Part shown: positions 1,538-63,656 of the stretch, one piece after another
How the letters are laid out: each line of letters begins with the position of its first letter
How positions within the stretch are numbered: position 1 is the stretch's first letter
From: Octopus sinensis
Taxonomy: Eukaryota
Direction of reading: 5' to 3'
Assembly (NCBI RefSeq): GCF_006345805.1
Contig: NC_043005.1
Coordinates: forward strand, 16,926,001 to 16,990,000
DNA: 64,000 nucleotides
Made by a program: the position numbers and the translations under genes
Notes under the pieces: model-generated
Database searches by the model: none
The model's input: the letters and a program-made list of their open reading frames with translations, nothing else
Told to the model about the DNA's origin: nothing

Positions 1538-1621
<84 letters not shown>

Positions 1622-4193: not shown

Positions 4194-4230
<37 letters not shown>

Positions 4231-4511
4231 TATATATATATATATATATGATGATATATATATATATATTTGGTAGACAGAAACTGAAGCCAGTCATGTG
4301 TGTGTGTGTGTGCGCCTGTGTTTGTTCCCCCAACATCGTTTGACAACCGATGCTGGTGTGTTTATGTCCCAGTAACTTAGCGGTTCGACAAAAAGAGACT
4401 GATTGAATAAGTACTAGGCTTACGAGGAAAAAGTCCTGGGGTCGATTAGCTCGACTAAAGGCGGTGCTCCAACATGGCCGCAGTCAAATGACTGAAATGA
4501 ATAAAAGAATA

Positions 4512-4566
<55 letters not shown>

Positions 4567-7265: not shown

Positions 7266-7655
7266 AGACGCAGGAGTGGCTGTGTGGTAAGTAGCTTGCT
7301 TACTAACCACATGGTTCCTAATTCAGTCCCATTGCATGGCACCTTGGGCAAGTGTCTTCTATAGCCTCAGGCCAACCAAAGCCTTGTGAGTGGATTTGGT
7401 AGATGGAAACTGAAAGAAGCCCGTCATATATATCTATGTGCGTGTATATGTTTGTGTGTCTGTGTTTGTCCCCCCAACATTGCTTGACAACCGATGCTGG
7501 TGTGTTTACGTCCCTGTAACTTAGCGGTTCAGCAAAAAGCAACTGATAGAATAAGTACTAGGCTTCAAAAGAATAAGTCCTGGGGTCGATTTGCTCAACT
7601 AAAGGTGGTGCTCCAACATGGCTGCAGTCAAATGACTGAAACAAGTAAAAGAATA
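7266..7655 (+). mobile_element. tRNA-derived SINE family 1 (head, ccttgggcaagt core, microsatellite, second module)
   Basis: At least 13 copies in the window at roughly 85-95% similarity by eye; A/B-box-like head ggagtggctgtgtggtaag...ggttcagtccc. Confidence 0.9.
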
Positions 7656-46800: not shown

Positions 46801-49800
46801 TTGTTGAGGGATTTTGTAGGTGGAAGATTACAAGATGTTAGTTTGTCCTGGGTCTTGTTGAAAAAAAATTTGCAGATTCAGGACACAGCAAATAAATGTT
46901 TGTCTTTTCCTAATTGAAAAATTCAGCCTTTTCTGAATTATTATTTTCTTTTTTTTTTTTTTTTTGGAAAGAGGAGTTAAAATTTATTTAATTTCTCATA
47001 TTTTATTTTGATTTATATATTTTCTTTTGTTATATATTAACATAATAAGAATACTATTTTTCCCAACATACAAGTCAATATAGTATATTTTGTAAACTTG
47101 TAGTGTAAATATTTGAACAATGCCACTATCTTTCTAAATCCTGCTACAGTTCACATAAAATTTTTGGTCCTCCTAAGTTGTCTTGGTCTAAAAGTTGACC
47201 TTTTCTGGACTGTAAACTTTTGTCTGAAAAATTCAGCTTGTATGCCTGAAAATATGGCTTTTAATTTTTGTTTTTTCAACATGATTGCTTTAAATGTTAT
47301 ATATATTTCAAAATAACTAGGTTTTAAAAAAAAATTTTTTTTTTTCTAGTTTAGACATTTTTACAAGCTTGTTAATAATGTTATTGTTTATTATACACTA
47401 TCCGAAGGTGATTGATGTCAGTACCCCCTGACTGGTTCCTGTACCGGTGGCAAGTAAAAAGCACCCACTACACTCTCGGAGTGGTTGGCATTAGGAAGGG
47501 CATCCAGCTGTAGAAACTTTGCCAGATCAGACTGGAGCTGAGTGCAGCCGCTGGCTCTCCAAACCTCAGTCAAACCGTCCAACCCATGCCAGCATGGAAA
47601 ACAGACGTTAAACGATGATGATGATCCCCCTACTGCTATAGGGGGATCCTGCATTACTGCTCTACTAGTTATACCGTACACACCACCACCACTTTTGTCC
47701 TAGTTATATTACACAATATTAATGCCACCACGTTACTCATATTCACCATATTTTGTTGACCTAACAAGCAATTCCATTACAACTAATGCAATTCTGTATT
47801 TCCAAGGGATAAACTCTGTTCTTGTTGAGATCTTCTAATTCTAACCAAACATTTACCTTTCAGATTCATCAGAAGGAAGGAGGATTTCCAGCACATGTGC
47901 CACACCCAGATGAATTGCCACCAGAACCTGAAATAATTGAAGTTGTGTTTGAGAAAGTGAAAGGCAGTATAGGACTAAGTATTGTAGCTGCTAAGGTGAA
48001 TATAGTCTACTTTACATTTTTCCTTCACTGAATTATGACAAATATTTAGTCTAAGTACTAAAGCTTTCCCCCATCATCATCATCATCTTTTGTGTCCTTG
48101 GTATTATTAGTCACCCTTATTGTCATCATCTTTGTTTTAAATGTCCATTTCCCATGCTTAGCATATACTGAACGTACCAATCATACAGTATATGTCGCTT
48201 GTCTCATCCTTTTGTTAACTTTTCTGTGTTGCACAACATCCTGAGACTTTGTCTTGTTTCTTCCCCCACCCCCCACTGTCTTTCTCAGCTAAAAAAAAAA
48301 AAAAAAAATCCACCTCTGACAGCATGATACCTTTTCCTTCAGAACCCATTTTCCTCTTTGCCCACACATCCATACCAGATCAGCTCACATCACCCAGTAG
48401 CTCATATTCAGTTACCTTTCCTGTATGTCTCTGCTTATACATTAATATTTAACTAATCTCAACTTGTGTGTATTCTACCTTTCATGTAGGTTAAGCATTG
48501 CACATCCAATGCATCATACTTCGTTTGTCCCTAAACTCTATTTTTTTCAGTAGTGTCCTATAAACCTTTGAATTACTGGAACACAGTCTTCTCGACTGTT
48601 CCATATTCCTTCAGATTACTGTGACACACAATCTTCAATACTGTCTCATAAACCTTTGAATTATTGGGACACAGTCTTCAGCAGTCCCATATTCCTTCAA
48701 ATTATTGTGACCCTACAGACTTCAGTAGTGTCCCCATATGCCTTCAAGTTACCAGTGTAATTAGTCTTCAGCAGTGTTCCATTATCATTGATTACTTTTT
48801 CAATCAAATGCAGCAGTTTGCACCGGTAATTACCTAATTCTACAATTTTAGATTAATCAACCCAAAACTAAATGAAGAGCTGCAAAACTTGGATGAATTC
48901 AACTTGAATTCTGGTGGAAAATATTTAACTTTTTCAAGGGTTTCAATGTTTTCATGAACACGGACTCCCCAAAGTTCTTTGCACATCCATTTAAAAAAAA
49001 AACTTAAACCATCATTTTTATACAATGTCCCCTTGTTGGGAAATTTGCTTTGATGAAATTAAACTGGTCAAAGGGTTAGAAGACATGCATTGATGTATCT
49101 TTTTTTGCATGTCAGACTGACCCCACCACCTATTCACATTTTGTTGATATATTTCCACATAAGACAGTGAATTGGTAGATTCAGTAGTGTTGAACATTGT
49201 TGTAGAGCTGAAAACGAGGTAATTTCTACTCTTCTCCCCTGGAAGCCATCTGCTCGCGATACCAGAGGGCACACACTCTCCTACCCAGATGTAATCGCCA
49301 GGGATACAGGCATCCAGCAACAGGACCTCCATAATGCTATGACGGACCGTGAAGTCTGGTGTAACGTAGTAAATTCCATTGTCTCGACCACAGTCGAACA
49401 ATGATGTGGATGAGTGTTGGACAAAATGCCTTTTTGATATTTGTCCTGCTTCTGTACATTCTGTGTTCAAATCCTGCTGAGGTCAACTTTGTTTTTCATT
49501 CTTATAGAGATGTTAAAATAAAATACCAGTCATGTACTGGTGTTGATGCCGCAAACTGTCTCCTTCCCACAAATTCCTGACCTTGTACCTATGTTAGAAA
49601 TTATTATATCCATGCATAGGAGGACATATACATATATAAAATCCTTGTTTATTGATCTAACACCCCACTGTTATCATCCTGGTATTAACCTCACTCTCCT
49701 TTGTTAAATGCCTTGTTTGTAAATACCCTGTTAACTTAACCTTCTGTTGTTAAATACCCCATGTTAACTCCCTGTTATTAACCCTGATCTTCTTGTTAAC

Positions 49801-52402
49801 CCTCGCCTTATTGTTAATCACCTCTCTTCACTGTTAACATTCCCTGCTTTTTGTTAACCTCCCCTCTGTTGTTATCCCACCAGTTTCTAAAACCGCCTAA
49901 ACCCTATCATTATCAACAGCCACGTTTTCTCATTGTGTAGATTACTATAGTGGACAGCCATGGTCGTACGGTAAGTAAGCGTGAAATGACCAAGCCATTG
50001 GTCTCACACTCTGTGTGTCCGATGACTATTTACGACTGTGTTGTCTCTTTCTCTCTCTCTCTCTCTTTGCCTGTTCATGTTATGACAAATGTATATTGGT
50101 CTTGATTTAATATCATGGTCACTTCACGGTCACCTTACCTCAATATTTGAGGAAATGCTGGATCACTTATTCACTTATGCATGGTTTCATGTACGTATGT
50201 GACACAAATGCAAACACACACACATATTTACACAATTGTATGCACTCATACACAACCTGCACAGAAGACACATGCATATCTACACTCACACACACACATA
50301 TATATATATAATGTTGTAACGTGCCAGTAGACTATTTGTTGTAAGCTTTTGAAAATTTCTCCTTCTTTCACTCACTGACTTTTAGATATCTTCAGATCTG
50401 TAGATCTAGTGTAAACTCTACTCTATATACCACCGCCTATCTTCAGTTTGTATCAAGTACAAAACAAGTGTAATTTATACTCTATATTCTGCTGTCTGCT
50501 CCTCTCTTCAGCTGTGTTGCTAAATCAGCTTCATAAAACAGCAAAATTTTAAGAGATACTGTTAGAAAGTAGTCCAAAATAAATGAAAATATTGCTAATA
50601 GAATTTATGTAGAATTCTGTATTATTTACATTTGATGATATTTGTCCTCATCTTGTTTGTTGTTAACACAACGTTTTGGCTGATATACCCTCCAATCTTC
50701 ATCAGGTGTCTTGGGGAAATTTCGAACCTGGGTTCTCATTCCTAAGGTATTTTTCGATGTTACTGCCTGGAATCGAACTCAGAATCTTGGGGTTAGTAGC
50801 CTGCACTCTTAACTACTATGCCATATGTCCGTGGGCAATTATAAAGTGAATTTTAGGGCTTATAAATCTAATATTTTTCTATCCTTCCTTAATACTGGTT
50901 CCCACTGGGTCTGCTTAGGAGGTTATTATGTCCTAGCATATGTGCTGCTTCTTTTAGTTTTCGTATTTTCCAGTTTGATTCCAGACAGTGACCTGAATAA
51001 TAATAATAATAATAATAATATCGAAAAATACCTTAGGAATGAGAACCCAGGTTTGAAATTTCCCCCAAGACACCTGATGAAGGCTGGAGAGTATATCAAC
51101 CGAAATGTTAGGTTAACAACAAACAAGATGAGGACAAATATCTGTCAAATGTAAATGTACATAATTCCTTGTCTCTTAAATATAGAACTGTATGTAGAAT
51201 TGTTTGTCATATTCATATAGATATACTGTTGAAAGTCTAGAAACTATGACACTCTTCTTGAGGAATCATCTTGTATCAATGTATTAGTAGCAGATGAAAA
51301 ATGTCTGGCAGCAGTTATGGAATTGCTGAATATGTATTTCTGCGTCTTTGAGTATCATCAACAGCAAGCATTGACAAACACTACATACCAAGATAAATTT
51401 AGTCTCTACTTGATAAGGAAAGAAAAAAAAAAAGACTTGAGAGATATTCTAGAAGAAAAATAAACTTTTATTTTTAAAAATTATTTTTTCACATTCAGCA
51501 CTTGTGTCAATTAGAGAATAGAAGGATTAAAATTCATTCTCGGTTAAGAACAATTTCTTGAGTCTTCATCTCTCCACCCTAAGTAAAAAATATAAGAACT
51601 TTATTTTATGCAGTTTCATATCAGCTGCAAAGCATGAAGGAATTAATAAATTTTCCTAAATGATCAATGCTATCAAAATCTGCATGACAAGCTTACAAAC
51701 ACTGATTTTATTATTTTCCTACTATTTTAGTTGATATAGTGTGTTGCAAATTTAAGTTTACTATTGGTACTTTGTGTTTCACTAAAGAAGCATGCTTTGT
51801 TAAATCAGATTTCTGAGCTCATGTTTCAACATCACTTTCTTTACAAAATACTTTATTGCTATCATACTTTCTTTCTCTCTCACTGAGTTTGAAAATTGTA
51901 GATTGGTTAAGCGCGACTTTTGAAGCATTTTAGTCACTTGAATAATTGAAGTTTAGTTTGTTCAGACTTTTATCACAATGAAATGCCATCATCGACTCCA
52001 GATTCCTTTGAATTTAGTACATCAGGGAGCTTAATGATAGCTCAACATGTTAGAAGTAACAGCCAAATATTCCTCAATTTACACCGTAATCTTAGAGAAG
52101 ACTACATAGAAGAAAAGTCACTCCACTATCTTTAAAAAGTGTATATTAGCACAAATATAAATTTATAACTGATTTCCTGTCACACTATCTTATTCTATCC
52201 TTAGAGTAAACTGTTACTAAACAGATCTAATCATAAAATAGGCGCAGGAGTGGCTGTGTGGTAAGTAGCTTGCTAACCAACCACATAGTTCCAGGTTCAG
52301 TCCCACTGCGTGGCACCTTGGGCAAGTGTCTTCTGCTATAGACCCGGGCTGACCAATGCCTTGTGAGTGGATTTGGTAGACGGAAACTGAAAGAAGCCTG
52401 TC

Positions 52403-52458
<56 letters not shown>

Positions 52459-55400
52459 CTGTGTTTGTCCCCCTAGCATTGCTTGACAACCGATGCTGGT
52501 GTGTTTACGTCCCCGTCACTTAGTGGTTCGGCAAAAGAGACCGATAGAATAAGTACTGGGCTTACCAAAGAATAAGTCCCGGGGTCGATTTGCTCGACTA
52601 AAGGCGGTGCTCCAGCATGGCCGCAGTCAAATGACTGAAACGAGTAAAAGAGTAAAGAGTAAGAGTATACCTGCCCACGAAGATTTCAATTCCAAATTCA
52701 ATAATGCCATTTGGAATGATTGAAACCAGATGTCAAAATTAATTTTAAGAAATATTGAAATTTTACATTGAATTTCTGAAAATAATGTTTAAAAATGGTA
52801 CTGCGAATGTGTAATGTTTGATTGAGCTGGAAGAATTTATTTAGGACAGTTGATATAAGTGATTGTCCTGTATGAGTTATTGTATGATGTAATCAATCCT
52901 AACTGATCAATACTTCTGTGAATTTCAAATGGGAAATAAAAGTTTGAAGAATTTCACATTACTAGATCTTTATTCATTCATTGTTTCCTTGAGCTGTATT
53001 GATGAATTACAGTTCAGATATAATTCCACAGTAATTACACTCCCCTGTGATATATTTTTTTCAAGGTTGTGTGTTTATGATACAATATCAACCAAAGTAA
53101 GAGAGACTATGGCAGTGGTTTTCAACCAAGGTTTCTCGGAACCTTAGGGTTCCGCAAGAAGTTACAAAACTGCTAAAATCGGCAGTAATTTTTAATTCTC
53201 CTGTGCAGATATGTGTGCATAAGACTATTAAATTATTGCACAGGGGTTCCTCGAGCCAGTGGAATGTTTCCTTGGGGTTCCGCTCCAGCAAAATGTATGA
53301 AAAGCACTGGACTATGGTATTTAACCCTTTCATTACCAACTCAGCTGAAACCGGCTCTGGCTCTGTAGTACAAATGTCTTGTTTTCATAAGTTTTGAATT
53401 AAAATCTTCCACCAAACCTTAGTCACAATTTATGTTCCTAACACTAGCTGAATGATAACTAAGTTATTTTACTAAATTCTTTGTTATATTTAAAGTAATT
53501 GAAAGAAATACAGAGCATCTCAAAATAAATACAGTAACGAAAGGGTTAATTAGTCGACAAATTTTACTTGTCAGCTAAAAATTTCATATAAATGAATGTT
53601 GGAATAGAAAACTAAACTGTGTTACCCACAAAATTTTCAAGTTATGCAACCCCCCCCCCCCCCAAAAAAAAAACAACAACAAAAAACAGCATAATCCAAT
53701 ACTTGTAGCCCAATCTGATAACCATAGTCTTCAGTTAGTACCAACTCTAGAATTAACGTAAGCTATATACAGCTGTTGTCTACTCCTGTCTAATTACTAG
53801 TTTTGGCACCACTGCTTGGCTATAATTAAAGTATCAGGTCTTTGATTAATGGTTTTGTACGTGGCTAATCTAATATAGCCATAGAAACTCCTTCTCTCTC
53901 TGTTTATCTCTCTCTCTTTGTCTCCGTGTGTGTGTGTCTCTCTCTCTCTGCTTGTCTCTTTCTCTCTTTTTCTCTGTCTCTCTCTCTATCTCTCTCTCTG
54001 AATGAGTTTCTTCTTAGCATTCTCCTTGCCTGCCTCCCTCTGACTTTCCTTCCTTCTATCCTTATTCTCTCCCTACTTTTTCACTTCCACTCTTTGTCTC
54101 TCTCTCTCTCCCTTCTACCTATTCTCTTACCTCTGTCTCTTACACTCACTCATTCCTGAACTCAGAACTCCCTAAGTACTAAGTAGAAAAAAAAACAAAA
54201 AAACAGACATACAATGACATGTTCCTTTCAAATTAGTCATCTGTTTCCTGTATTAGTATACCACACCATTGCACCTATGCCTGTAGCTGTTACTTTGCTA
54301 CTTCACAATCATTAAATCTCAATCCTTCACTCTTGTTACTCCATTTTCACTAACATTTTAATCCTTGATAATAAACAACCACATTCTGGCCACTTCAGTG
54401 ATTAATATTGTGCTGGTGCTCCAGCCTGGTCAGGAACATCACAGTAATCTAAAATGATTAATGAAGGCCTCCAGTTTTCATCTATTCGACTTGATCCTCA
54501 CTAACCTCACCCATATCAGTTGTTGGCTGCATGCAACCTGTAGGACTTTCTGTGTGGCCTGCTGAACGAAAACCTTTTTTTAGTAATGTGGTTTGCTTTA
54601 TGGTAAGCTTTGTCTCATGTGGGCCCACTTCATGGAAAAGGTTGCCCCAAAATGAGAAACCTGTTATTTCAACAACACATTGAGTCAGATGTAATTTAAT
54701 AGGGCCTCATTGAGGTAAATGTCATTAACTATATTATTGTTCTACTTGTCATATGTGTTCGAGTGTTACACCTTGAACAACCTTCACAATGGAACTGAAT
54801 TTTTAACCTGATAAAATATGAAAGTCTGTGAAGTGATGCTTTAACCCTTTAGCATTTAAACCATCTATATCTGGCCAAATATTCTACTTATTTTATGCTC
54901 AAATCAGCCAGATCCAGCCTCTTACACCTACCCTATCATGTCATTCCAAAACAAATACTTTACTTACAGTGAGCCATCACATAGTGTGCTATCAGTGATT
55001 GAAATAGCATAAGAGAGAGACAATCTCTTTGATCAGTTCGAGGTGTCACCTGCCTGGTGTCTGTGACCAAAGAGGAGACAACTGCTCCGAAATGCTGACA
55101 TCTCGGTAGGTGGTGCTGCAAACTGATCTACTGTGTATCCACACCATTTGTCAGCAGCAAGAAATTTTCTGTATGCCAAAACACAGTGAATAGCTTGTTC
55201 TTCAGTTTGAATGTACCTCAAGCATATTTGAACTGGTAAATAACATTGCATTAAAAAAAAATATTATCACATCATTGAAATTTTAAAGCTGCAAGGTAAT
55301 GCGTGATTAATTCAAAGCAATGTAAATGAATATGCCTTACATTTGACAGAATAATCTGAACGCTAAAGGGTTAAAATTGAAATAGCAACAATTATTAATC

Positions 55401-58400
55401 ATCATCATCATCATCATCGTTTAACGTCCGCTTTCCATGCTAGCATGGGTTGGATGATTTTGACTGAAGGCTGGCAAACCAGATGGCTGCACCAGGCTCC
55501 AGTCTTGATCTGGCAGATTTTCTATAGCTGGATGCCCTTTCTAACGCCAACCACTCCGAGAGTGTAGTGGGTGCTTTTAATGTGCCACCGGCACAGGGGC
55601 CAGTCAGGCGGTGCTGGCAATGACCTCGCTCAAATCTTTTTACACGTGCCACCGGCACAGGTGCCAGTGAAGTGACGTTGGTAACGATCACGCTCAAATG
55701 GTGCCTTTTTACGTGTCATGGGTACGGAAGCCAGTTGGCTGCTCTGGCAACGATCACGCTTGGATGGTGTTCTTGGCACCCTACTAGCACAGGCATAAGT
55801 GCCAGTAAGGCGACGCTGGTAACGATCATACTCGAATAGCCGCTCTGTCAACGATCATACTCGAATAGCCGCTCTGTCAACGATCACACTCGTATGGTGC
55901 TCCTTGCACCCCGCTAGCATGGATGCGAGTCATCGAAATGATTTTGATTTAATCATGTAAATATTAAAGAAATTCAGCTATCTGGTGCTTAAGCCATTTG
56001 ATACCAGTCCATGTGAGATTGCTCCTGGTTCTGTTGTACAAAAGAACCTCAATCAAAACCTTCCATCAAAATTCTGTTTTGTGTGTCAAACACCAGCTTA
56101 ATAACAGACAACATTATTTTACTAAATTCTCCATTATTTAAAAAATTAATGGAAACGAAGGCAGCGTATATCAACAGAAATTTGGTGGTGAAAGGGTTAA
56201 ACAAACTGCTATGCCTTGACGATAGCAACAATTAAGGTGTGCTATATGGTTGGTGGGTTGTTTTTCTTTCTCTAGAGTGTAAGGCTAACAGAGAAAATTA
56301 TGGATATTTTATTACGACAGAGATAATAAAAAAAACAGTTTGCTAAGTAATAATTATGCTAGGACACAGATCTAGTGAGTCTTCTGTCTCTGTTATTACC
56401 TAGCACGCTCTTTTTTATCGTCTCTAACTATTGCAACGTAGTGTAATCAGTGGCAACACTGTTTTATTGTAACCGTTTTACTACATCTTTCACTGTCTTG
56501 TGTTAGTCTTCAGTTAGTACCATAGTACCAACTGTAGACTTCACCTTTCATTGTGCTTCATTTTTAATATATTTAAATATTTTCTTTCTTCTCTCCAATA
56601 AAATCTCTACACCAAATAGAAAAAGAAAATGTTTTGAAATTTCTTTGTCAAACTCACTATTCCTCACATATATTCACTTTCATTGTTATAATTTCACGCA
56701 TAGACATATATTTGATGTTAAACCCCTGTTTAATGGCTTAATTTTCCCTTTTTGTTAATCACCACCCCTGCATTGTTAAATGTATCCTATTTTCAACCAC
56801 CACCCTTGAATACACCCTGTTAACACCCCTTCTCTATTAACCTGTTTTTCCCTCGTTAACCTCCTTCCCATACTTTGTGTTTAACCATGTCCTGCTTACA
56901 ACCTTGTGTTTTTTAACCATTCTTATATTGTTAATGCTATATTGTTTAACTTTTACCCCTGCTCATGTTAACCCAACCCTATAGTTGATGTTCACCTCTG
57001 TTAATACCTACAATTGTTAACCCTCAGTTTCTAAAACCTTTCAAACCCTGTTGTTATCAATAGTCACATTTTCTCATTGTGTAGATTACTATAGTGGACA
57101 GCCATGGTCGTGTGGTAAGTAAGCGTGAAATGACCAAGCCATTGGTCTCGCACTCTGTGTGTCTGGTGACTATTTACGACTGTGTTGTCTCTCTCTCTCT
57201 CTGCCTGTTCATGTTATGACAAACGTATATTGGTCTTGATTTAATGTCATGGTCACTTCAGGGTCACCTTACCTCAGTATTTGAGGAAATGGTGAACCAT
57301 TTATTCACTGATGCATGGTTTCATGTATAACACAGGTGCATACACACTGTGATTTTATATACATATGTACACACACATACATTAATATGCATGTGTATAT
57401 ATGTGTATATGTATGATGAATGCAAAATGTTCATATATATATATACACACAAATATTCACACACATATATACACACATGTGCACATATACATGTGCATAT
57501 ATTGTATAAGTAGCATGTTGTTATGAATTTGTACCTATTGGCTATTTTGTAGTATAGTTTCTTGTCTCAATCACTGACTTTGAGTCAATTTTCTTCTGTT
57601 AGTACTGTTTGTAGAACTAGTTTCTAGAATAGTGTAACTCTACTCTATATACAACTGCCTGTCTTCTGTTAGTACCAACTGTAGAATTAGTGTAAACTAT
57701 ACTGTATATGCTACTGCCTGTCTTCAGATATCACCTGTCAGAACTACTGTAAACTATATATATATATGTAATATAATTGTTCTTTCTTATGTAAAATATA
57801 GAACTGCTTTAGAATTAAGATATAAACTCAAATTGGGCAATCACACAGTTATAAATTTGACTTAAAATGCACATACATATATTAATACATATTGGCACAT
57901 GAATATTTTTTTTAATATTTATAAAATGTATATATATAAATGGGTTGTATTTACATACACTTTTATGCATGTATATGTTTTATAAATATTTAAAAAAAAT
58001 ATTCATATGTGTCCATGTATTAATATATGTATGTGCATTTTAAGTCGAATTTATAACTGTATGAGTATGATTGCCTAATTTGAGTTTATATCTTAATTAT
58101 CTTTTGTCTTACGTTCGACCTGCGCAGTTCTATATTTTTCGAAAGAAAGAATAATAATATTTTATATATATATATGCACTCTGCTGCCTGTTCTCAGTTA
58201 GTATCAACCAGAGAACTAGTGTAAATGCTACTGTAGCTTAGACAACTGTACATGTTTACAAAAACTTGAAATCGGTTCTGTCTTTAGTTAAACCAACTCG
58301 AGAACTAGTGTAAATTACACTATTTATGCTACTGCCTGCTCTGATCTAATTACTAGTTTTAAACTCCAATTCTATGCATTTGTTTATTACTGGTCTGTAA

Positions 58401-61400
58401 TCAAGGTATTAGGTCTTCGATAAAGGTTTTACCTGTGACTAATCTAACACAGCTCCATAAACTTGGTCTGCCTGTCTCTCTACCTTTGAGTTTCTTTTTG
58501 GCAATCTTGTACTTGCTTGCCTCTTTGATTCACCCCTTCTGCATTTTCTTCTCTTTCTCCTTTCTATTATCTCTCTTCTGTCTATCCATTCTCTCTCTCT
58601 TTCATTCACACACCTACTCTTTTATTTTCCTCTCTTGGTCTTTCAGACTCATTCTCAACCTTATTAACTCTAAGGAATTTATGTAGACATTTGATGTCCT
58701 GCTCCTTTCAAATTAGTGATTGCTTTATTGTAGCGTTGTACCACCTCATTGCACCTATGCATGAGCTGTTACTTTGCTGCTTTCACTTACAGTAATCGAA
58801 TCCTCAACCTTAAGCAATTTACTGTACTTTCAACTGAAAGATCAGTTCCTTGTAATAAACAATCACATTCTGGCTATTTTATTGGTTACAGTTGTGCTTG
58901 ATACTTCTGCCTGATCCAGAACACATACTCTTTTACTCTTTTACTTGTTTCAGTCATTTGACTGCGGCCATGCTGGAGCACCGCCTTTAATCGAGCAACT
59001 CGACCCCGAGACTTATTCTTTTGTAAGCCCAGTACTTATTCTATCGGTCTCTTTTGCCGAACCGCTAAGTAACGGGGACATAAACACACCAGCATCGGTT
59101 ATCAAGCAATGCTAGGGGGACAAACACAGACATACAAAGACACACACACGCATATATATATATATACATATATACGACGGGCTTCTTTCAGTTTCCGTCT
59201 ACCAAATCCACTCACAAGGCTTTGGTCGGCCCGAGGCTATAGTAGAAGACACTTGCCCAAGGTGCCACGCAGCAGGACTGAACCCGGAACCATGTGGTTT
59301 GTAAGCAAGCTACTTACCACACAGCCACTCCTGCGCCTATCTATAATCTAAATTGACTAAACCTCCAACAGTCAACACACTGGTACACCAGCTTGGTCAA
59401 ACCTTCCCTTTTAGTATATTAAGTGTTCTAGAAATTAAAGAATTGAAGACACTAAACCAATACCTTGGAAAGTGACTCAAAGCAAAGAATAGAGCTTTAT
59501 TTATCAAATAAGACAGACAACTTGAAAGTTTTACACAAATTGGTTTTCCAAACACTTTTGTTGACTTCAGCCAAACCTTGAGAGCTTCTGTTTCCTCTAC
59601 ATGTTTCTTATTTCTTTATTGCCCACAAGGGGTTAAACAGAGAGGGGGCAAACAAGGACAGACAAAGGGATTAAGTAGATTACATCGATCCCAGTGTGTA
59701 ACTGGTACTTAATTCATCAACTCTGAAAGGAGGAAAAACTAAAAAGCAAAGTTGACCTCAGTGGAATTTGAACTCAGAATGTATCGGCAGATGAAATACC
59801 GCTAAGCATTTCACCCGGCATGCTAACATTTCTGCCAGCTCGCTGCCTTCTGTTTCTGCCCCTCTATCATGCTTTTATGTCCTTCAATACCCCACTCAGT
59901 CAAAGGGTCTTGTTTTGCAAGTTCTTGGTAAACCCACTTGTGCTGGTTCAATGAAAAAGCATTCAGTATAATCTATAGAAAGGGCATCCTGCTGTAGAAA
60001 ACATGCCAAAGATGTTGGAGCTCTGTGCAGCCCTCTGGTTTGTCGGTTCCTATTAAACTATCCGTTCCATACCAGTATGGAAAAGGGGATATTAAATGAT
60101 TTGTAATTGATTTAGAAATACGTTAAAATTTCTTGACAGAAGGGCAACTACTGCTAGTTTCAAATCTAAAATTCTAGCCTGCTACACACATGTACAGGTT
60201 TTGCAACTTGATGAGAATCCAAATATTTTGGGGGATTCTAAAATGGCTGGTGTCACCTTTTCAGTTCAGGAATTTGATATTTCTGAATCAGTAATTATTG
60301 CATATATGAGGGAAAAAAAGACACAGACACAGGCATACACACAGGCATAAAATAATTTCATTAGTTCTTAGTTTTGGAGAACATGGCATGATTATAAAAT
60401 TCATTTTTAAAGTTTTATATTTAAGAGATGAGGAATTATGTACATTATTTACATTTGACATATTTTTGTCCTCATCTTGTTAACGTTTCAGCTGATATAC
60501 CCAAGACACCTAATGAAGGCTGAAGGGTATATCAGCCAAAATGTTGTGTTAACAACAAACAAGATGTGGACAAATATCTGTCAAATGTAAATTATGTCCA
60601 TTTTTAAAGGTTCTGCATTTCCGCTACAAGTATTCACTGTCACATTTATTTGAGATTTTCTTTAATGCAACACACCCATAGTTCTCTTAGCTTGTGAGTA
60701 ACTAGTTTGATTATTATTGAGTGAGAGAGCAGTTCATGCCATCAAAGTGACACTGGGGTAAAATATACGAAGCCCAGTATACCCATCATGACTACCCGTC
60801 TGATAAGGGTACACCAGGCACATGCATCACAACCATATGTGCACGACATGGTGATCTCATATCAAGGTAAACAGCGCATGACCTTGCAGGTGGGGCCCAG
60901 TTAGAATTTTCTTCAGGTTGAGTAGCCCATCCCGTTTGAAAGGTCCCTGAATAAGGGTTGTTTAAGGATGTTGAAAGAACCACTCATGTTTCCAGAGGTG
61001 AATTATTGAAACCCCAAAGAATCCCGCTCAACACATGGCTATGATGCTCCCCCACTACTTCTGCTTGTGATCAGAGATGCACATATCATCAGCCACTAAG
61101 GGACATGGTCAACTGGTTAAGGTCAAACAACTGACAAGCAAATCTGTGATATTGAGCAGAATATTTGCTGTAGCCCATCTTTTATACCAAGACAAAACAA
61201 TGTACATGATAACACTTCCAATCAGTTAAGATCAGAAGCCATGAGAGCCACTGTCTGGTACTGCATCAGGGCATTATTATTATGATTATTATTATTAAGG
61301 TGGTGAGCTGGTGGAATAATTGGGATGAAACTTCATTCCAAAGATATGTTTGTTCCAGTAAATTGTGGCATTTTTAGAGAATTGTCCAAAGAGAATATTT

Positions 61401-62168
61401 ATCAAAATTCTTTAAAATTGTGTACATTGATTAGCAGCAGTGCGTGTTCTCTCTCTCGCTTTTTAATGTCCATTGTCCATGCTGGCATGGGTTGGACGGT
61501 TTGATTGAAAACTGATAAACTGGGGAGCAGCACCAGGCTTAAATCTGATTTGGCATGGTTTTTTTCAGCTCGATGCCCTTCCTAATTCCAAACACTCCAG
61601 GAGTGTAGTGAGTGCTTTTTACATACCACCAGCACAGGTGCCAGTTATGAAACACTGGCATTGACCACAACTGTGATCTAACTTGGCTTGACAGGTGAGC
61701 TGGCACACCAGACAAAATGCTTAGTGGAATTTCGTCCACGTTTATATTCTGTGTTCAAATGCTGCCAAGGTCGACTTTGCCTTTTCAGCCTCTCATGGTT
61801 GATAAAATAAATACCAGTCAGACACTGGGGTCAATGTAGTTGACTAGCCCACTTACCTAAAATTTCAGCCTCTGTGGCTATAGTAGAATGGATTATTATT
61901 ACATTTTTATTATTATTATAATTAAGTGTCCAATATTATAAAATTTTCACCACCCACAAAATAATAATCCCTTTATGAACTCTCATTAACGAACACCTGA
62001 TCTGTTGCTGCTGAGCTCCAGAGCAGTACTGATCATGTGCACTTAGATCAAAGGCATTGTGAAATAAATGCATGACCTGCTAAATATAGCAGCCAGGTCT
62101 CCCTTCCTACTTACCTCTTAAATAGGGAAAGACACATTGGTTAATGTAGTTGTCCTATATATATATAT

Positions 62169-62200
<32 letters not shown>

Positions 62201-63044
62201 TTAGCATCCGCTTTCCATGCTAGCATGGGTTGGACGGTTCAACTGGGGTCTGTGAAGCCAGAAGGCTGCATCAGGCCCAGTCTGATCTGGCAGTGTTTCT
62301 ACGGCTGGATGCCCTTCCTAATGCCAACCACTCCGTGAGTGTAGTGGGTGCTTTTTATGTGCCACCCGCACAGGTGCCAGACGGAGCTGGCAAACGGCCA
62401 CGGACGGATGGTGCTTTTTACGTTCCACTGGCACGGGGGCCAGACGAGGCTGGCAACGGCCCGAACGGATGGTGCTTTTACGTGCCACTGGCACGGGGGC
62501 CAGGCAAGGCTGGCAATGGCCATGAACGGATGACTACATTCACTGGTGTATAGTAGAGATCATGCTGCTATATTTAGCATGCCATGCATCCACTTGGGGG
62601 TTGTCTTCTTGACTCAACAAGACCTGTTGTATTTTGGGTGGCTGAAAATTAATTTAAATGTATTTATAATAAATATTTTTATAGTCTTGGTAATTACTTA
62701 TTAATATTGGCTTTAGAACACATTTTTTTTTTACTATTGTATGTAATTTCAACTTTATCAACAAAGAGATAGACTTTGTTATAAGGTTGCATGCAACTTG
62801 AGTCTTTGACTTCTTTCTTTCTTTCTCTCTCTCCCCCTTCCCCACTATCTCTTTCTCTCTCTTCCTTCGATTTTGTCAACAATGGAAACCATATCGTTCC
62901 CTCAATCCTTCCATCTTCTCTCATGTCACCTAAAATAACAAATCAGTTATGTAAGTAAAGTTGGCAACAGATTCTGTCGCCGTCATATTACTGCTGACTA
63001 TAACTTGCATTTTAATTATCAAAGTTGAAATTTTGTTGCTTTTG

Positions 63045-63076
<32 letters not shown>

Positions 63077-63656
63077 TATGTGTGCTTACTGGCTAATTTT
63101 CATTTTTCCTTTATTTGTGTGTAGTATTTTATGTGGTCTATATAAGTTAGTTTTAGAATTATAAAATACCATTTTCTGTTCTATTGAGGATCTCACAGGT
63201 AGTTAATTGTTTCACAAATCAAGCATAGTCTCAGGTTTCTATTTAATTTTCTTACCGTCTCCAAACCACTGACCATAAGAGATCATTGTCAAAAAAAAAC
63301 TTAAAGAATTTGCTAAAAAAATAAAACAGGCATTGAATATTAAGTCAAGGTTTATTTGGATTGTTTAAAAATACTTGCTAATTGTCAAAGCAAACCCTCA
63401 CTTGTTTCTGGAAGGAAAGATGGGCTGTTGTAAAATTGTGCTATAGATCACAAGAGACCATTTAATTTTGCTAATTATCTTCTGGAATGCAAAAGTTTGG
63501 TTGAAGTATGAAATCAAACTCTGTCCCGGTACACATTTCTTGTTCCCTTCCTGAATATAATTTCTTTACTCTTTCTTCTGTTATTTCCAGGGTGATGGCC
63601 AGATGTCACGAGGAATCTACATCAAGTCAGTTGTGCCTGGTGGAGCAGCTGCTTTG
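21063..63656 (+). CDS. AFDN: Afadin (AF6/canoe) orthologue, partial multi-exon CDS: end of RA2, FHA, DIL and N-terminal half of PDZ
   Basis: Eleven GT-AG exons join in frame (2099 nt). The translation matches remembered afadin motifs in the correct order: LPYLVE, LQLNVTEVG, FGPNIHPCHC, FKLAPTYTLY, LAFWMANASE, RRCRVNAALTIQLFSQLFHFINMWLFN, WAEKQGLELAADCHL, FKLNSLQ, LQLPFLLPEDGYSCD, GLSIVAAK, GIYIKSVVPGGAA. Confidence 0.97.
22561..23185 (+). mobile_element. hAT-like MITE interrupted by a SINE; a second, inverted copy lies at about 23640-23942
   Basis: agtggttctcaacc start and atggaccctggttgag end; a ~95-bp segment is the reverse complement of 23850-23942. Confidence 0.55.
22668..23066 (+). mobile_element. 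SINE family 1
   Basis: Full-length copy nested in the hAT-like MITE. Confidence 0.88.
24004..24220 (+). mobile_element. Mariner-derived MITE
   Basis: TA-flanked inverted ends (gaggtgctgaaaagtt / aacttttcagtacccc); retains the transposase C-terminal remnant KLKDHCSKCVNLRGEYVE*. Confidence 0.75.
24475..24628 (-). mobile_element. RTE-clade LINE 3' fragment
   Basis: Minus-strand translation GRPRKTWDEVVKHDLRTLGLTKEMTRDRDLWKYAVREKTRQD*, a typical RTE ORF C-terminus. Confidence 0.85.
24742..24839 (+). CDS. AFDN: Afadin exon (FHA start): GMDEMDGRRHHLQLNVTEVGSEKPTSESGQYLQ
   Basis: ctctacag acceptor, cag/gttagt donor, phase 1/0. Confidence 0.93.
25040..25510 (+). mobile_element. CR1/L2-type LINE 3' fragment, 5'-truncated
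   Basis: ORF 25141..25434 contains LKLRHLATDLVNTHKVI..., TRRHAYKV and FRKHFFTFRVAEAWNKLPASV, which match the CR1 ORF2 C-terminus; (TTA)-rich tail. Confidence 0.85.
25725..25925 (+). CDS. AFDN: Afadin exon (FHA): LFGPNIHPCHCVIAH...HVFRFCDSRSDE
   Basis: ctgtgtag acceptor, gag/gtaata donor, 67 codons, phase 0/0; overlaps ORF 25758..26303. Confidence 0.95.
25960..26300 (+). repeat. Polypyrimidine (CT-rich) tandem tract
   Basis: Repeats of cttctctcttttcctcc and ctctctcttcttgctcc starting about 35 nt after the FHA exon donor. Confidence 0.9.
27553..27777 (+). mobile_element. piggyBac-type MITE family B
   Basis: Near-identical to 53325-53545; gtaacgaaaggg-TTAA end. Confidence 0.75.
27989..28152 (+). 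CDS. AFDN: Afadin exon (FHA-DIL linker): RPSKVSRSPDHRLQ...AREEMLR
   Basis: cttggcag acceptor, aa/gtaaga donor. Phase 0/2 is exactly what is needed to join the flanking exons; little recognisable homology. Confidence 0.8.
28710..29032 (-). mobile_element. SINE family 4
   Basis: Aligns by eye to 37754-38091. Confidence 0.8.
29327..29427 (+). CDS. AFDN: Afadin exon: NAPNSITHSP...DEVLPAALEFRED
   Basis: ttaaag acceptor, g/gtaaat donor, phase 2/1; LPAALEFRE matches vertebrate LPASIEFRE. Confidence 0.93.
30278..30734 (+). mobile_element. SINE family 1, diverged
   Basis: Both modules present with an expanded (TA)n spacer. Confidence 0.8.
31698..31903 (+). CDS. AFDN: Afadin exon: AQTPFLSELIP...FKLAPTYTLYLAIRY...LIQQTIK
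   Basis: ttttcag acceptor, aag/gtaaat donor, phase 1/0. Confidence 0.95.
31973..32176 (-). mobile_element. Retroposon family 3, with about one array unit
   Basis: Reverse copy starting about 70 nt after the afadin exon that ends at 31903. Confidence 0.85.
33258..33790 (+). mobile_element. SINE family 2 split by two tandem family 3 inserts (33330-33655, minus)
   Basis: Head at 33259-33328; the body resumes at tgttctgagttcaaattc (about 33655). Confidence 0.8.
33923..34166 (+). CDS. AFDN: Afadin exon: EKSEDPASLAFWMANASEILNFLKQD...FSVP
   Basis: tttttag acceptor, cag/gtaggt donor, phase 0/1; overlaps ORF 33959..34189. Confidence 0.95.
34831..35051 (+). mobile_element. piggyBac-type MITE family A
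   Basis: TTAA-ccctttag ... ctaaaggg-TTAA; near-identical to the copy at 19349. Confidence 0.85.
35818..36119 (+). CDS. AFDN: Afadin exon (DIL core): ETGYRQKAQPTLGDVL...DCHLCRIIQ
   Basis: atttcag acceptor, cag/gtatgt donor, phase 1/0; overlaps ORF 35808..36140. Confidence 0.97.
37437..37658 (-). mobile_element. piggyBac-type MITE family A, reverse orientation
   Basis: Reverse-complement body with TTAA-cccc and aaaggg ends. Confidence 0.75.
37754..38091 (-). mobile_element. SINE family 4: tRNA head with an RTE-related body
   Basis: Minus strand ggcgcatggctcagtggttagagcg...gagctcgaatccc head; related copies at 28710-29032 and 43173-43469. Confidence 0.85.
38567..39001 (+). CDS. AFDN: Afadin exon (DIL C-terminal part): AAHLLQAPK...GPRLNE
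   Basis: ttcacag acceptor, gag/gtaaga donor, 145 codons; overlaps ORF 38552..39037. Confidence 0.97.
39360..39755 (-). mobile_element. RTE/BovB-like retrotransposon 5' region
   Basis: GC-rich island. The minus strand contains ctcctcaccatggtgggg...gagctctgccg...cctggtagggccacccaagg, resembling remembered RTE/BovB 5' UTR motifs; highly structured. Confidence 0.6.
39559..39747 (-). ncRNA. Candidate HDV-like self-cleaving ribozyme
   Basis: A nested double pseudoknot can be drawn by hand (P1, P2 of 8 bp, P3 of 3 bp, P1.1 CC/GG, P4 with a cUUCGg loop, J4/2 CCAA). L3 is 13 nt and P1 has one mismatch. Confidence 0.4.
40181..40545 (-). mobile_element. Possible non-autonomous Helitron-like element
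   Basis: The minus strand begins A/TCTTTATATATAAAAG followed by tgtctgtc, typical of Helitron 5' ends; it truncates a SINE at 40182. No clear 3' hairpin/CTRR seen. Confidence 0.4.
40861..41388 (+). mobile_element. Retroposon family 3 with about six 63-bp tandem units
   Basis: Unit gtggccgttcgccagcctcgtctggcacctgtgtcggtggcacataaaaaacaccatccgagc recurs at 40921, 40984, 41047, 41110 and 41173. Confidence 0.92.
41741..42110 (+). mobile_element. Retroposon family 3 with three variant units
   Basis: Units contain gccgccttgactggcttcc; (GAT)n tail. Confidence 0.85.
42783..43144. repeat. Near-perfect long inverted repeat (171-bp arms, 20-nt AT spacer)
   Basis: 42783-42953 is the reverse complement of 42974-43144 with two mismatches found. 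Confidence 0.95.
43173..43469 (-). mobile_element. SINE family 4
   Basis: Aligns by eye to 37754-38091. Confidence 0.8.
44217..44865 (+). mobile_element. SINE family 1 spanning the assembly gap
   Basis: Head before and second module after the N run. Confidence 0.85.
44498..44597. other. Assembly gap (100 N) inside an AT microsatellite
   Basis: Run of N. Confidence 1.
47864..47995 (+). CDS. AFDN: Afadin exon (PDZ betaA-betaB): IHQKEGG...EPEIIEVVFEKVKGSIGLSIVAAK
   Basis: cctttcag acceptor, aag/gtgaat donor, phase 0/0. Confidence 0.96.
48550..48790. repeat. Degenerate tandem repeat of about 40-bp units
   Basis: Recurrent taaacctttgaattat/ctgg.acacagtcttc and ccatattccttca.att units. Confidence 0.6.
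48960..49412 (+). mobile_element. Degenerate RTE-clade LINE 3' fragment
   Basis: HCCRAENEVIS...LPWKPSARDTRGHTLSYPDVIARDTGIQQQDLHNAMTDREVWCNVVNSIV...* with the stop at 49402-49404. Confidence 0.8.
49941..49970 (+). CDS. AFDN: Predicted 30-nt microexon A (ITIVDSHGRT)
   Basis: ttttctcattgtgtag acceptor, acg/gtaagt consensus donor, open phase 0/0, and a conserved duplicate at 57085. No transcript evidence available. Confidence 0.7.
50619..50836 (-). mobile_element. tRNA-headed element with a Penelope-type hammerhead motif (copy 1)
   Basis: Minus strand: A-box/B-box-like head (tggcatagtagttaag...gagttcgattcc), then the body, then gacac-ctgatga-a-gattg...cagcc-aaaa-cgt-t-gtgtt at 50665-50710. Confidence 0.65.
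50972..51190 (+). mobile_element. tRNA-headed/hammerhead element copy 2, inverted relative to copy 1
   Basis: B-box remnant and (AAT)n, then gacac-CTGATGA-a-ggctg...caacc-GAAA-tgt-t-aggtt at 51069-51114. Confidence 0.65.
52240..52665 (+). mobile_element. SINE family 1
   Basis: Full-length copy close to the family majority sequence. Confidence 0.9.
53113..53309 (+). mobile_element. hAT (Charlie-like) MITE
   Basis: Inverted ends cagtggttttcaa / atgaaaagcactg with a perfect 8-bp target-site duplication GACTATGG (53105-53112 and 53310-53317). Confidence 0.9.
53325..53545 (+). mobile_element. piggyBac-type MITE family B
   Basis: TTAA-ccctttcattac ... gtaacgaaaggg-TTAA; a diverged relative lies at 55993-56196. 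Confidence 0.85.
54845..55370 (-). mobile_element. piggyBac-type MITE family A with a ~300-bp internal insertion
   Basis: TTAA-ccctttag and ctaaaggg-TTAA ends; the body is interrupted at about 54955-55255. Confidence 0.8.
55400..55925 (-). mobile_element. Retroposon family 3 with a long heterogeneous array
   Basis: Reverse copy with repeated aacgatcacgctc...atggtgc units. Confidence 0.85.
57085..57114 (+). CDS. AFDN: Predicted 30-nt microexon B (ITIVDSHGRV)
   Basis: Same acceptor, gtg/gtaagt donor, phase 0/0; differs from microexon A only in the last codon. Confidence 0.7.
57770..58165. repeat. Long imperfect inverted repeat (foldback or MITE-like)
   Basis: 57813-57925 pairs with about 57975-58098; outer arms 57775-57808 and 58125-58160 also pair. 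Confidence 0.85.
58928..59338 (-). mobile_element. SINE family 1
   Basis: Full-length copy. Confidence 0.9.
59608..59849 (-). mobile_element. SINE family 2
   Basis: Full-length reverse copy. Confidence 0.85.
60411..60600. mobile_element. Inverted pair of truncated hammerhead-element copies
   Basis: Minus partial copy 60411-60502 abuts a plus copy with gacac-ctaatga-a-ggctg...cagcc-aaaa-tgt-t-gtgtt at 60505-60550. Confidence 0.6.
62170..62535 (-). mobile_element. Retroposon family 3 with three units
   Basis: Reverse copy. Confidence 0.88.
63591..63656 (+). CDS. AFDN: Afadin exon (PDZ betaC-alphaA): GDGQMSRGIYIKSVVPGGAAAL
   Basis: ttatttccag acceptor, ttg/gtaagt donor, phase 0/0. Confidence 0.96.

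What the first reader, a model, noticed from the sequence alone, without database searches (positions are those of the whole stretch)
49941..57114. Tandem-duplicated 30-nt microexons predicted to insert into the afadin PDZ betaB-betaC loop
Seen: the 15.6-kb intron between ...GLSIVAAK (ends 47995, phase 0) and GDGQMSRGIYIK (starts 63591, phase 0) contains two copies of ttttctcattgtgtag/ATTACTATAGTGGACAGCCATGGTCGT(ACG or GTG)/gtaagt at 49941-49970 and 57085-57114. Both have consensus splice sites and an open frame, encoding ITIVDSHGRT and ITIVDSHGRV. Established: the betaB strand and betaB-betaC loop of PDZ domains contribute to peptide selectivity, the afadin PDZ binds nectin C-termini, and frame-preserving microexons are typically neural. 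Inference: an alternatively spliced switch (skip, A, B or A+B) remodels afadin PDZ binding, with a Thr versus Val difference that could add or remove a phospho-acceptor. I do not recall such an insert in vertebrate or fly afadin.
Basis: partly seen in the sequence, partly recalled or inferred. Interest (0 to 1): 0.88.

Follow-up and report, generated by a model that had tools for sequence, protein, structure and literature searches.

The report
Duplicated mini-exons in octopus afadin PDZ
Two copies of a 30-base mini-exon in the octopus afadin gene add 10 or 20 amino acids to a ligand-contacting loop of its PDZ domain; public gene models already include them, but nobody has studied them, and their effect on binding is untested.

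Summary
Two 30-nt, frame-preserving units with identical acceptor (ttttctcattgtgtag) and donor (gtaagt) sit at 49941-49970 and 57085-57114. They lie in the 15.6-kb phase-0 intron that splits the afadin PDZ domain between GLSIVAAK and GDGQMSRG.

They are not a new discovery. The window is Octopus sinensis afadin, and RefSeq already annotates both units as coding exons:
- isoforms X1, X2, X4, X6 and X7 carry A+B;
- X3 carries A only;
- X5 carries neither;
- there is no B-only model.

The two copies belong to a young local duplication of about 0.3-0.6 kb (core about 92 % identical). The exon and its splice signals are no better conserved than the rest of the block, so their identity is not evidence of selection.

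New here: 8-9 kb mRNA assemblies from a sister-clade cephalopod carry an unrelated 30-nt cassette (TKDPDYDIQK) at exactly the same junction. Every other afadin/canoe examined keeps the short loop.

Structure models keep the PDZ core. In the +10 form they extend the betaB-betaC hairpin, at only moderate-to-low confidence.

The closest precedent is the PTP-BL PDZ2as 5-residue splice insert, which abrogates binding. Effects on ligand binding, tissue specificity and the Thr/Val phospho-switch idea remain untested.

The parts
47864..47995 (+). Afadin exon encoding the linker plus PDZ betaA-betaB (IHQKEGG...GLSIVAAK). It ends in phase 0.
   Evidence: 100 % match to O. sinensis afadin.
47996..63590 (+). 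15.6-kb phase-0 intron that splits the PDZ domain at the betaB / betaB-betaC loop boundary. It is rich in dispersed repeats and microsatellites.
49941..49970 (+). Cassette microexon A, 30 nt, encoding ITIVDSHGRT. Acceptor ttttctcattgtgtag, donor gtaagt.
   Evidence: Present in RefSeq isoforms X1, X2, X3, X4, X6 and X7.
57085..57114 (+). Cassette microexon B, 30 nt, encoding ITIVDSHGRV. Its splice signals are identical to those of A. It differs from A by 2 nt in the last codon (ACG to GTG).
   Evidence: Present in RefSeq isoforms X1, X2, X4, X6 and X7, always together with A.
49881..50193 (+). Copy A of the high-identity core of the duplicated block: 60 nt upstream, the exon, and about 220 nt downstream. 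Weaker similarity continues to 50498.
   Evidence: (families D5, D8, D14).
57025..57327 (+). Copy B of the duplicated core. Weaker similarity continues to 57720.
63591..63656 (+). Afadin exon encoding the rest of the betaB-betaC loop plus betaC (GDGQMSRGIYIKSVVPGGAAAL). It starts in phase 0.

Best explanation
A and B are genuine alternative cassette exons of Octopus sinensis afadin, and they arose by a recent local duplication of a single 30-nt exon together with its splice signals. Both are phase 0-0, so they can be included independently without changing the frame. The annotated outcomes are a PDZ domain with the ancestral 8-residue betaB-betaC loop (skip), a +10 form (A) and a +20 form (A+B).

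The insert sits immediately after the last residue of betaB, the strand that pairs with the ligand's C-terminal peptide.

Inferred mechanism: the hydrophobic ITIV continues betaB, DSHGR makes a turn, and the native loop is drawn into a longer betaC. This gives an elongated betaB-betaC hairpin beside the peptide groove, which re-tunes PDZ ligand binding. By analogy with PTP-BL PDZ2as, the likely effect is slower or weaker binding of canonical C-terminal ligands. Extra contacts with upstream ligand residues are also possible.

What is shown: the sequence anatomy, the gene identity, the presence of the exons in annotated isoforms, the duplication, and the position of the insert in the fold.
What is inferred: that the isoform models rest on spliced reads, the conformation of the insert, and any effect on binding or tissue specificity.
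For: - Sequence and frame are as described.
- There are 2 copies against 0 expected by chance.
- A and B are the only candidates with strong splice sites among 437 in the intron.
- The gene is O. sinensis afadin, with RA-RA-FHA-DIL-PDZ-AFDN domains and 100 % identity including insert A.
- Seven RefSeq isoforms carry A+B, A only, or neither.
- A different 30-nt cassette at the identical junction is assembled in 8-9 kb mRNA contigs from four RNA-seq runs of a sister-clade cephalopod. This shows that the junction accepts a 10-residue splice insert in vivo.
- AlphaFold models keep the PDZ core at pLDDT 84-94. In the +10 form the strands run 19-29 and 35-49, which is a longer hairpin.
- The closest solved folds are the afadin-nectin-3 complex (3AXA), Canoe-Echinoid (7MFW) and PTPN13/PTP-BL PDZ2.
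- PTP-BL PDZ2as carries a 5-residue splice insert at the start of the same loop, and that insert abrogates binding (PMC4365404).
Against: - The RefSeq proteins are conceptual translations of this same genome. I could not inspect junction reads.
- No independent octopus transcript contig covering the PDZ, with or without the insert, was found in any length band.
- The O. vulgaris, O. bimaculoides and Argonauta models lack the insert. This may reflect annotation depth rather than true absence.
- The exon plus splice signals are not more conserved between A and B than the surrounding duplicated intron: 3/84 versus 22/219 mismatches, Fisher p = 0.10, scan statistic P = 0.53. There is therefore no signal of purifying selection.
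- Model confidence in the insert itself is low: pLDDT 56-70 in the +20 form and 58 at the hairpin tip in the +10 form.
- In Drosophila the Canoe PDZ is reported to be largely dispensable in the laboratory (PMC10399776). This tempers the expected phenotypic weight.
Confidence: 0.72

Rival explanations
1. Young, effectively neutral exonisation. The 30-mer with strong splice sites is spliced in, and is therefore annotated, but it is a recent lineage-specific accident. Its duplication and inclusion have no adaptive role, and the PDZ simply tolerates a floppy loop.
For: - There is no excess conservation of the exon over the flanking duplicated intron.
- The duplication is young: the core is about 8 % diverged, while the intron of another octopod is about 20 % diverged from the window.
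- The insert is absent from the available O. vulgaris, O. bimaculoides and Argonauta protein models.
- Model confidence in the insert is low.
- The fly PDZ is largely dispensable.
Against: - Five of the seven annotated isoforms include both exons, so inclusion does not look marginal.
- The loop is otherwise invariant in length across Bilateria. An insert that is tolerated in most models is therefore unlikely to be inconsequential.
- A second cephalopod lineage has a cassette of the same length at the same junction.
Confidence: 0.2
2. Annotation artefact. The exons were placed in the gene models by the prediction pipeline without real spliced-read support, and they are not used in vivo.
For: - The proteins derive from the same assembly as the window.
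- No independent transcript contig was found.
- The other differences among isoforms X4, X6 and X7 are length variants of a GPPHQ repeat, and these look like alignment-driven models.
Against: - From general knowledge of the NCBI pipeline, not tested here: alternative variants are only emitted with transcript or RNA-seq support, and a 30-nt exon is not predicted ab initio.
- Three distinct inclusion states are modelled.
- The splice signals are perfect consensus.
- The transcript searches found no octopus PDZ fragments of any kind, so they are uninformative rather than negative.
Confidence: 0.06
3. Exonised mobile element. The roughly 0.6-kb unit is a transposable element that carries cryptic splice sites, and it inserted twice into the same intron.
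For: - The intron is packed with dispersed repeats and MITE-like hairpins.
- The left edge of the duplicated block is sharp, at about 49869-49881.
Against: - There are only two copies in 64 kb, both in the same orientation and the same intron. True dispersed families in this window have 5 or more copies.
- No terminal inverted repeats were reported at the block ends.
- Genome-wide copy number could not be tested with these tools.
Confidence: 0.08

Closest known systems
PTP-BL / PTPN13 PDZ2as, the alternatively spliced VLFDK insert
   Same: - It is an alternatively spliced, frame-preserving insert at the very start of the beta2-beta3 (betaB-betaC) loop of a class-I-like PDZ domain.
- PTPN13/PTP-BL PDZ2 is among the closest solved folds to the octopus model (ranks 5, 9 and 13).
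- The insert abrogates APC/RIL peptide binding by lowering the association rate, without destabilising the fold (PMC4365404).
   Different: - It is 5 residues, against 10 or 20 here.
- It is a single exon, not a duplicated pair.
- It is in a different protein.
- Its functional effect has been measured, whereas here nothing has.
Canonical afadin / AF-6 / Canoe PDZ (3AXA nectin-3 complex, 1T2M, 7MFW Echinoid complex)
   Same: It is the same domain and gene family. The PDZ core is 51-58 % identical to the vertebrate and fly domains and superposes on them. The skip isoform X5 has the ancestral loop.
   Different: No vertebrate, insect, mite, annelid, gastropod or bivalve afadin retrieved has an insert at this junction. 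Oysters have only +2 residues. Known afadin/Canoe splicing concerns the C-terminal disordered region (PMC10399776).
TKDPDYDIQK cassette in afadin of a sister-clade (decapodiform-like) cephalopod, from Logan mRNA assemblies P0040 and P0041
   Same: It has the identical junction (AAK|GDGQ), the identical length (30 nt, 10 aa) and the identical phase. It is alternative, because most assemblies of that species lack it.
   Different: - The sequences are unrelated: 10/30 nt and 1/10 aa identical.
- No counterpart exists in the octopus intron.
- It is a single copy.
Neural microexon programme (SRRM4 / eMIC-dependent)
   Same: These are very short, frame-preserving cassettes that alter surface loops of interaction domains. 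Fly and mouse programmes were assembled largely independently (PMC8797185), which echoes the unrelated cassettes seen in octopus and in the sister clade.
   Different: The octopus exons are 30 nt, at or above the usual size limit. There is no UGC within 40 nt of either acceptor. Neural specificity is unknown.
Tandem exon duplication giving mutually exclusive exons
   Same: The origin is a local tandem duplication of an exon with its splice sites.
   Different: The copies are not mutually exclusive: both are included in X1 and neither in X5.

Membership tests
Afadin / AF-6 / Canoe | Domain order RA-RA-FHA-DIL-PDZ followed by the afadin C-terminal region | tested here: met
   Precomputed Pfam domains for P0001 are PF00788, PF21989, PF00498, PF01843, PF00595 and PF26705. 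Window exons map to residues 331-1050 of isoform X1.
Afadin / AF-6 / Canoe | PDZ domain of the afadin type (GLSIVAAK ... GIYIKSVV ... DGRLQAGDQLL) | tested here: met
   See the alignments. The best fold matches are 3AXA, 1T2M and 7MFW.
Alternative cassette exon | Canonical AG/GT boundaries and frame preservation | tested here: met
Alternative cassette exon | Transcripts both with and without the exon | tested here: inconclusive
   RefSeq isoform models exist with A+B, with A only and with neither. The underlying reads could not be inspected, and no independent octopus transcript contig was found.
Neural eMIC/SRRM4-dependent microexon | Length of 27 nt or less (strict definition) | tested here: not met
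   Both exons are 30 nt. They would qualify only under looser definitions.
Neural eMIC/SRRM4-dependent microexon | UGC motif close to the 3' splice site (PMC8797185) | tested here: not met
   There is no TGC in the 40 nt upstream of either exon. The motif was defined in vertebrates and flies, not in molluscs.
Neural eMIC/SRRM4-dependent microexon | Neuron-restricted inclusion | not testable with these tools
   No RNA-seq read data by tissue were available.
Mutually exclusive tandem-duplicated exons | Adjacent duplicated exons in one intron | tested here: met
Mutually exclusive tandem-duplicated exons | Exactly one copy per transcript | tested here: not met
   X1, X2, X4, X6 and X7 contain both copies. 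X5 contains neither.
PDZ beta2-beta3 loop splice insert (PTP-BL PDZ2as type) | Alternative insert located at the start of the beta2-beta3 loop | tested here: met
   The insert follows K25, the last betaB residue, in the alignment and in both models. The PDZ2as position is taken from PMC4365404.
PDZ beta2-beta3 loop splice insert (PTP-BL PDZ2as type) | Insert alters or abrogates binding of the C-terminal peptide | not testable with these tools
   This needs binding assays with recombinant domains.

The most novel reading that the evidence does not exclude
Coleoid cephalopods have placed a splice-controlled 10-residue module in the afadin PDZ betaB-betaC loop, a loop that is otherwise frozen in length across Bilateria. 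This happened either twice independently or once, followed by complete sequence turnover. Octopus then duplicated its module, giving a graded 0/+10/+20 hairpin extension that tunes which junctional ligands afadin binds, possibly in a tissue-specific (neural) manner.
Probability: 0.25. Interest if true: 0.6.

Novelty: new member of a known kind. Interest (0 to 1): 0.4.

Why it matters
Afadin links nectin-type adhesion receptors and other junctional ligands to actin. Its PDZ domain is the most conserved part of the protein, and the betaB-betaC loop has the same length in every non-cephalopod afadin retrieved except oysters, which have +2.

A splice-selectable insert of 10 or 20 residues at the edge of the ligand groove would be the largest known splice insert inside an ordered PDZ domain. 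One survey found a maximum of 5 residues for structurally characterised isoforms (abstract of PMC3045584).

An unrelated cassette of the same length at the same junction in the sister cephalopod lineage would also be a neat case for how microexon programmes evolve.

Against this, the exons are already in RefSeq, no selection signal is detectable, and no function is shown. It is a reasonable lead for a PDZ or cephalopod-splicing laboratory, not a surprise of the first order.

Tried and rejected
1. Dispersed repeat. Rejected: there are only two copies in the window.

2. Conservation between A and B as evidence of constraint. Rejected: the mismatch distribution is compatible with random placement.

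3. A TKDPDYDIQK-like exon hidden in the octopus intron. None found: the best ungapped BLOSUM62 score was 16, with no splice sites.

4. Independent octopus transcript contigs carrying the insert. Three protein searches covered candidate lengths of about 72-227, 248-787 and 826-2628 aa.
- Only RefSeq models carried the insert.
- No octopus transcript assembly spanning the PDZ appeared at all; the one short octopod hit (P0069) is a genomic gene call.

5. Orthologous intron DNA.
- The O. bimaculoides, O. vulgaris and Argonauta genes exceed the 100-kb retrieval limit.
- Genomic contigs of another octopod (L005-L007) align to window 46503-49613 at about 80 % but stop about 330 nt short of exon A.

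6. Exact look-ups of the ORF that crosses exon A found nothing. A full-library search with it gave one irrelevant weak hit.

7. Literature. No paper links afadin with microexons, with octopus splicing or with a PDZ insert.

8. The Thr/Val phospho-acceptor idea. There was nothing to test it with. Both copies keep T2 and S6, and I did not recognise a kinase consensus around the last residue (own judgement).
Full report
**1. Observation**

- Each is preceded by ttttctcattgtgtag and followed by gtaagt.
- They translate to ITIVDSHGRT and ITIVDSHGRV.
- The upstream exon ends ...GLSIVAAK at 47995, and the downstream exon starts GDGQMSRGIYIK at 63591. Both boundaries are in phase 0, and the intron between them is 15,595 nt.
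- The shared 27-mer occurs twice in the window even with three mismatches allowed, against zero expected in shuffles.
- I enumerated every AG|open frame of 9-60 nt|GT unit in phase 0 in the intron. There are 437 candidates. Five have a pyrimidine-rich acceptor and a donor matching GTAAGT at 5 of 6 positions or better. Only A and B have a perfect GTAAGT.

**2. The repeat is a duplicated block, not a duplicated exon**

- The similarity starts sharply about 60 nt upstream of the exon.
- It runs about 220 nt downstream at 91-93 % identity (49881-50193 versus 57025-57327), with a 10-nt indel in a CT microsatellite.
- It resumes more weakly at 50407-50498 versus 57630-57720.
- Nothing else in the 64 kb matches it. 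Real dispersed families in this window have five or more copies. It is therefore a local duplication 7.1 kb apart in the same orientation.
- The core has 25 mismatches in 303 aligned columns. The unit from 16 nt upstream of the exon to 38 nt downstream of it has 3 mismatches in 84 columns, against 22 in 219 elsewhere (Fisher p = 0.10). A stretch this clean arises in 53 % of random placements.
- The near-identity of A and B is therefore explained by the youth of the duplication and says nothing about selection.
- The only two exonic differences fall in the last codon (ACG to GTG, Thr to Val).

**3. Gene and species**

- I searched with the spliced peptide (exon, insert A, exon), padded so that full-length proteins qualify by length. 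It hit afadin isoform X3 of Octopus sinensis (XP_029640557.1) at 100 % identity over 100 % of the query, insert included. The protein has RA, RA, FHA, DIL, PDZ and AFDN domains.
- tblastn places residues 331-1050 of isoform X1 on the plus strand of the window at 21062-63656.
- O. vulgaris differs in this exon (HVPHS versus HVPHP), so the window is O. sinensis.

**4. The exons are already annotated**

Listing the members of the 90 % cluster and reading the junction gives the following:
- X1, X2, X4, X6 and X7 read AAK-ITIVDSHGRT-ITIVDSHGRV-GDGQ.
- X3 reads AAK-ITIVDSHGRT-GDGQ.
- X5 reads AAK-GDGQ.
- There is no B-only model.
- The O. vulgaris (CAI9728758.1), O. bimaculoides (XP_052826944.1 and older models) and Argonauta hians models lack the insert.

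These proteins are conceptual translations of the same assembly, so they are not independent sequence evidence. Their weight rests on the rule that NCBI emits alternative variants only with transcript or RNA-seq support. That rule is my own knowledge and was not tested here. The remaining differences among the isoforms are an 8-residue cassette and length variants of a GPPHQ repeat. The repeat variants are a reminder that some modelled 'isoforms' can be alignment-driven.

**5. Search for independent transcripts and for conservation**

- Two further protein searches covered fragments of about 72-227 and 248-787 aa. They found no octopus transcript assembly spanning the PDZ, with or without the insert, so they are uninformative.
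- One short hit (P0069) is a gene call on genomic contigs of another octopod. Its intron aligns to window 46503-49613 at about 80 %, but the contigs stop about 330 nt short of exon A.
- The annotated afadin genes of O. bimaculoides, O. vulgaris and Argonauta span 124-236 kb, which is beyond the DNA retrieval limit.
- Exact look-ups and a full-library search with the ORF crossing exon A gave nothing useful.
- Conservation of the 30-mer in other octopods therefore remains untested.
- The core of the duplicate is about 8 % diverged, whereas the other octopod's intron is about 20 % diverged. This suggests the duplication is younger than that split (inference).

**6. A second, unrelated cassette at the same junction**

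- In a cluster of unnamed full-length proteins from Logan assemblies, P0040 and P0041 read AAK-TKDPDYDIQK-GDGQ. P0004, P0035, P0036, P0037, P0045 and P0046 read AAK-GDGQ.
- P0041 is encoded on 8-9 kb mRNA-like contigs in four different RNA-seq runs.
- The insert is again exactly 30 nt. It shares only 10 of 30 nucleotides and 1 of 10 residues with the octopus exon.
- In a maximum-likelihood tree this species and a second unnamed one form the fully supported sister clade of Octopus plus Argonauta within cephalopods. That is the position expected for squids and cuttlefish.
- No TKDPDYDIQK-like exon exists in the octopus intron.
- So the junction accepts a 10-residue alternative insert in two deep cephalopod lineages. 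This arose either by independent exonisation or by complete turnover of an ancestral cassette, and I cannot distinguish the two.
- The 8-residue cassette shows the same pattern (AKVSEQIE in octopus, GRVVINEE in the other lineage) but with faint residual similarity.

**7. How unusual the insert is**

- Every other afadin/canoe PDZ retrieved has eight residues between GLSIVAA and GIY. This covers vertebrates, insects, a mite, an annelid, gastropods and bivalves.
- Oysters are the only exception, with ten.
- Genomic gene calls that run from intron into exon in vertebrates begin the exon at GAGQ. This is consistent with the same ancient intron position (inference).

**8. Structure**

- With an alignment of 16 afadin/canoe PDZ domains, AlphaFold2 models the +20 form with a confident PDZ core (block means 84-93). 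The insert is modelled as a low-to-moderate confidence excursion (56-70) with scattered beta-bridges.
- The +10 form is modelled with betaB running on through K25-ITIV (strand 19-29), a DSHGR turn, and betaC beginning early (strand 35-49). This is a lengthened betaB-betaC hairpin, with pLDDT 78 falling to 58 at the tip.
- The nearest solved structures are the afadin-nectin-3 complex 3AXA, AF-6 PDZ 1T2M, Canoe-Echinoid 7MFW and PTPN13/PTP-BL PDZ2.
- These models show that the fold can plausibly accommodate the insert. They do not establish its conformation.

**9. Mechanism and precedent**

- betaB pairs with the ligand's C-terminal peptide, and the betaB-betaC loop flanks the groove where upstream ligand residues lie (general PDZ knowledge; PMC4365404).
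- The closest documented case is PTP-BL PDZ2as. Its 5-residue cassette (VLFDK) at the start of the same loop abrogates APC and RIL binding, through a roughly ten-fold lower association rate without loss of stability (PMC4365404).
- My best explanation is that octopus afadin uses A and A+B as graded extensions of this hairpin that re-tune PDZ ligand binding. Weakened or slowed binding of canonical ligands is the most likely direction, by analogy.
- Confidence is about 0.8 that the exons are really spliced, and about 0.4 that binding changes measurably in the stated direction.
- A caveat: the Canoe PDZ is reported to be largely dispensable for fly development in the laboratory (PMC10399776).

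**10. Comparison with known classes**

- As neural eMIC/SRRM4 microexons: the exons are 30 nt and lack a UGC within 40 nt of the acceptor (motif from PMC8797185). Tissue specificity is untestable here. I therefore do not file them as members of that programme.
- As mutually exclusive duplicated exons: they fail the exclusivity test, because X1 has both and X5 has neither.
- What they are: ordinary cassette exons in an unusual place, with an unusual duplicated arrangement.

**11. Novelty and verdict**

- The exons are already public as RefSeq CDS.
- No paper in the searchable library links afadin to microexons, to octopus splicing or to a PDZ insert.
- I rate the finding a new member of a known kind, namely a splice insert in a PDZ beta2-beta3 loop, and of moderate interest (0.4).
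- The points that raise it above routine are the size of the insert, the otherwise frozen loop, the tandem copy that gives three states, and the unrelated same-length cassette in the sister lineage.
- The points that lower it are the prior annotation, the absence of any selection signal and the absence of functional data.

Noticed in passing
window 3704-3727 (+): A second alternative afadin microexon, 24 nt and phase 1, encoding AKVSEQIE (codons span 3703-3726; acceptor ...ttcccag, donor gtagga). It is absent from O. sinensis isoform X2. The sister-clade cephalopod transcripts have an 8-residue cassette, GRVVINEE, at the same junction, with faint similarity.
   Followed up: partly
L001 (Logan SRR8281672 contig): about nt 4055-4084, derived from protein residues 1019-1028 of the CDS at 1001-7909. 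Also L002-L004.: A 30-nt cassette, ACAAAAGATCCAGATTATGATATTCAAAAG (TKDPDYDIQK), is inserted at the afadin PDZ AAK|GDGQ junction in an unnamed decapodiform-like cephalopod. It is present in P0040 and P0041 and absent in most assemblies of the same species.
   Followed up: yes
window 52238-52656 and 58932-59340: A pair of inverted repeats of about 420 nt, 89-92 % complementary, brackets microexon B inside the intron (pairs I1 and I2). It is probably two copies of a mobile element in opposite orientation. In a pre-mRNA such pairing could in principle loop out exon B. This was not examined.
   Followed up: no
window 50612-50762 / 51016-51167; related copy at 60408-60601: A MITE-like hairpin element just downstream of copy A, with arms 88-96 % complementary, and another copy 9.4 kb further on.
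   Followed up: no
window 49411-49543; also about 3196, 3444, 30922, 33656, 38360, 59742 (-) and 61711: A dispersed short repeat family (72-88 % identity) lies immediately upstream of the duplicated block. The other octopod's genomic contigs (L005-L007) end just past their copy of it, at the equivalent of window position 49613.
   Followed up: no
window 47408-47625 (-), 55398-55699, 61440-61676 and 62178-62521: Another dispersed repeat family, starting with an (ATC)n tract and containing CCATGCTAGCATGGGTTGGA. One inverted copy lies only about 240 nt upstream of the PDZ exon at 47864 (families D4, D7, D9 and D13; pairs I3-I5, I9 and I11).
   Followed up: no
P0009, P0012-P0017 and P0019 (oyster afadins): Ostreid afadins have a constitutively different and 2-residue longer betaB-betaC loop (GLSIVEATPKSEGQKVSGIYIK). 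This is the only other length change at this loop among the afadins retrieved.
   Followed up: no
O. sinensis isoforms X4, X6 and X7, at residues about 1187-1250 of X1 (outside the window): These isoform models differ only in the number of GPPHQ pentapeptide repeats downstream of the PDZ. That pattern could reflect alignment-driven 'introns' inside a repeat rather than real splicing.
   Followed up: no
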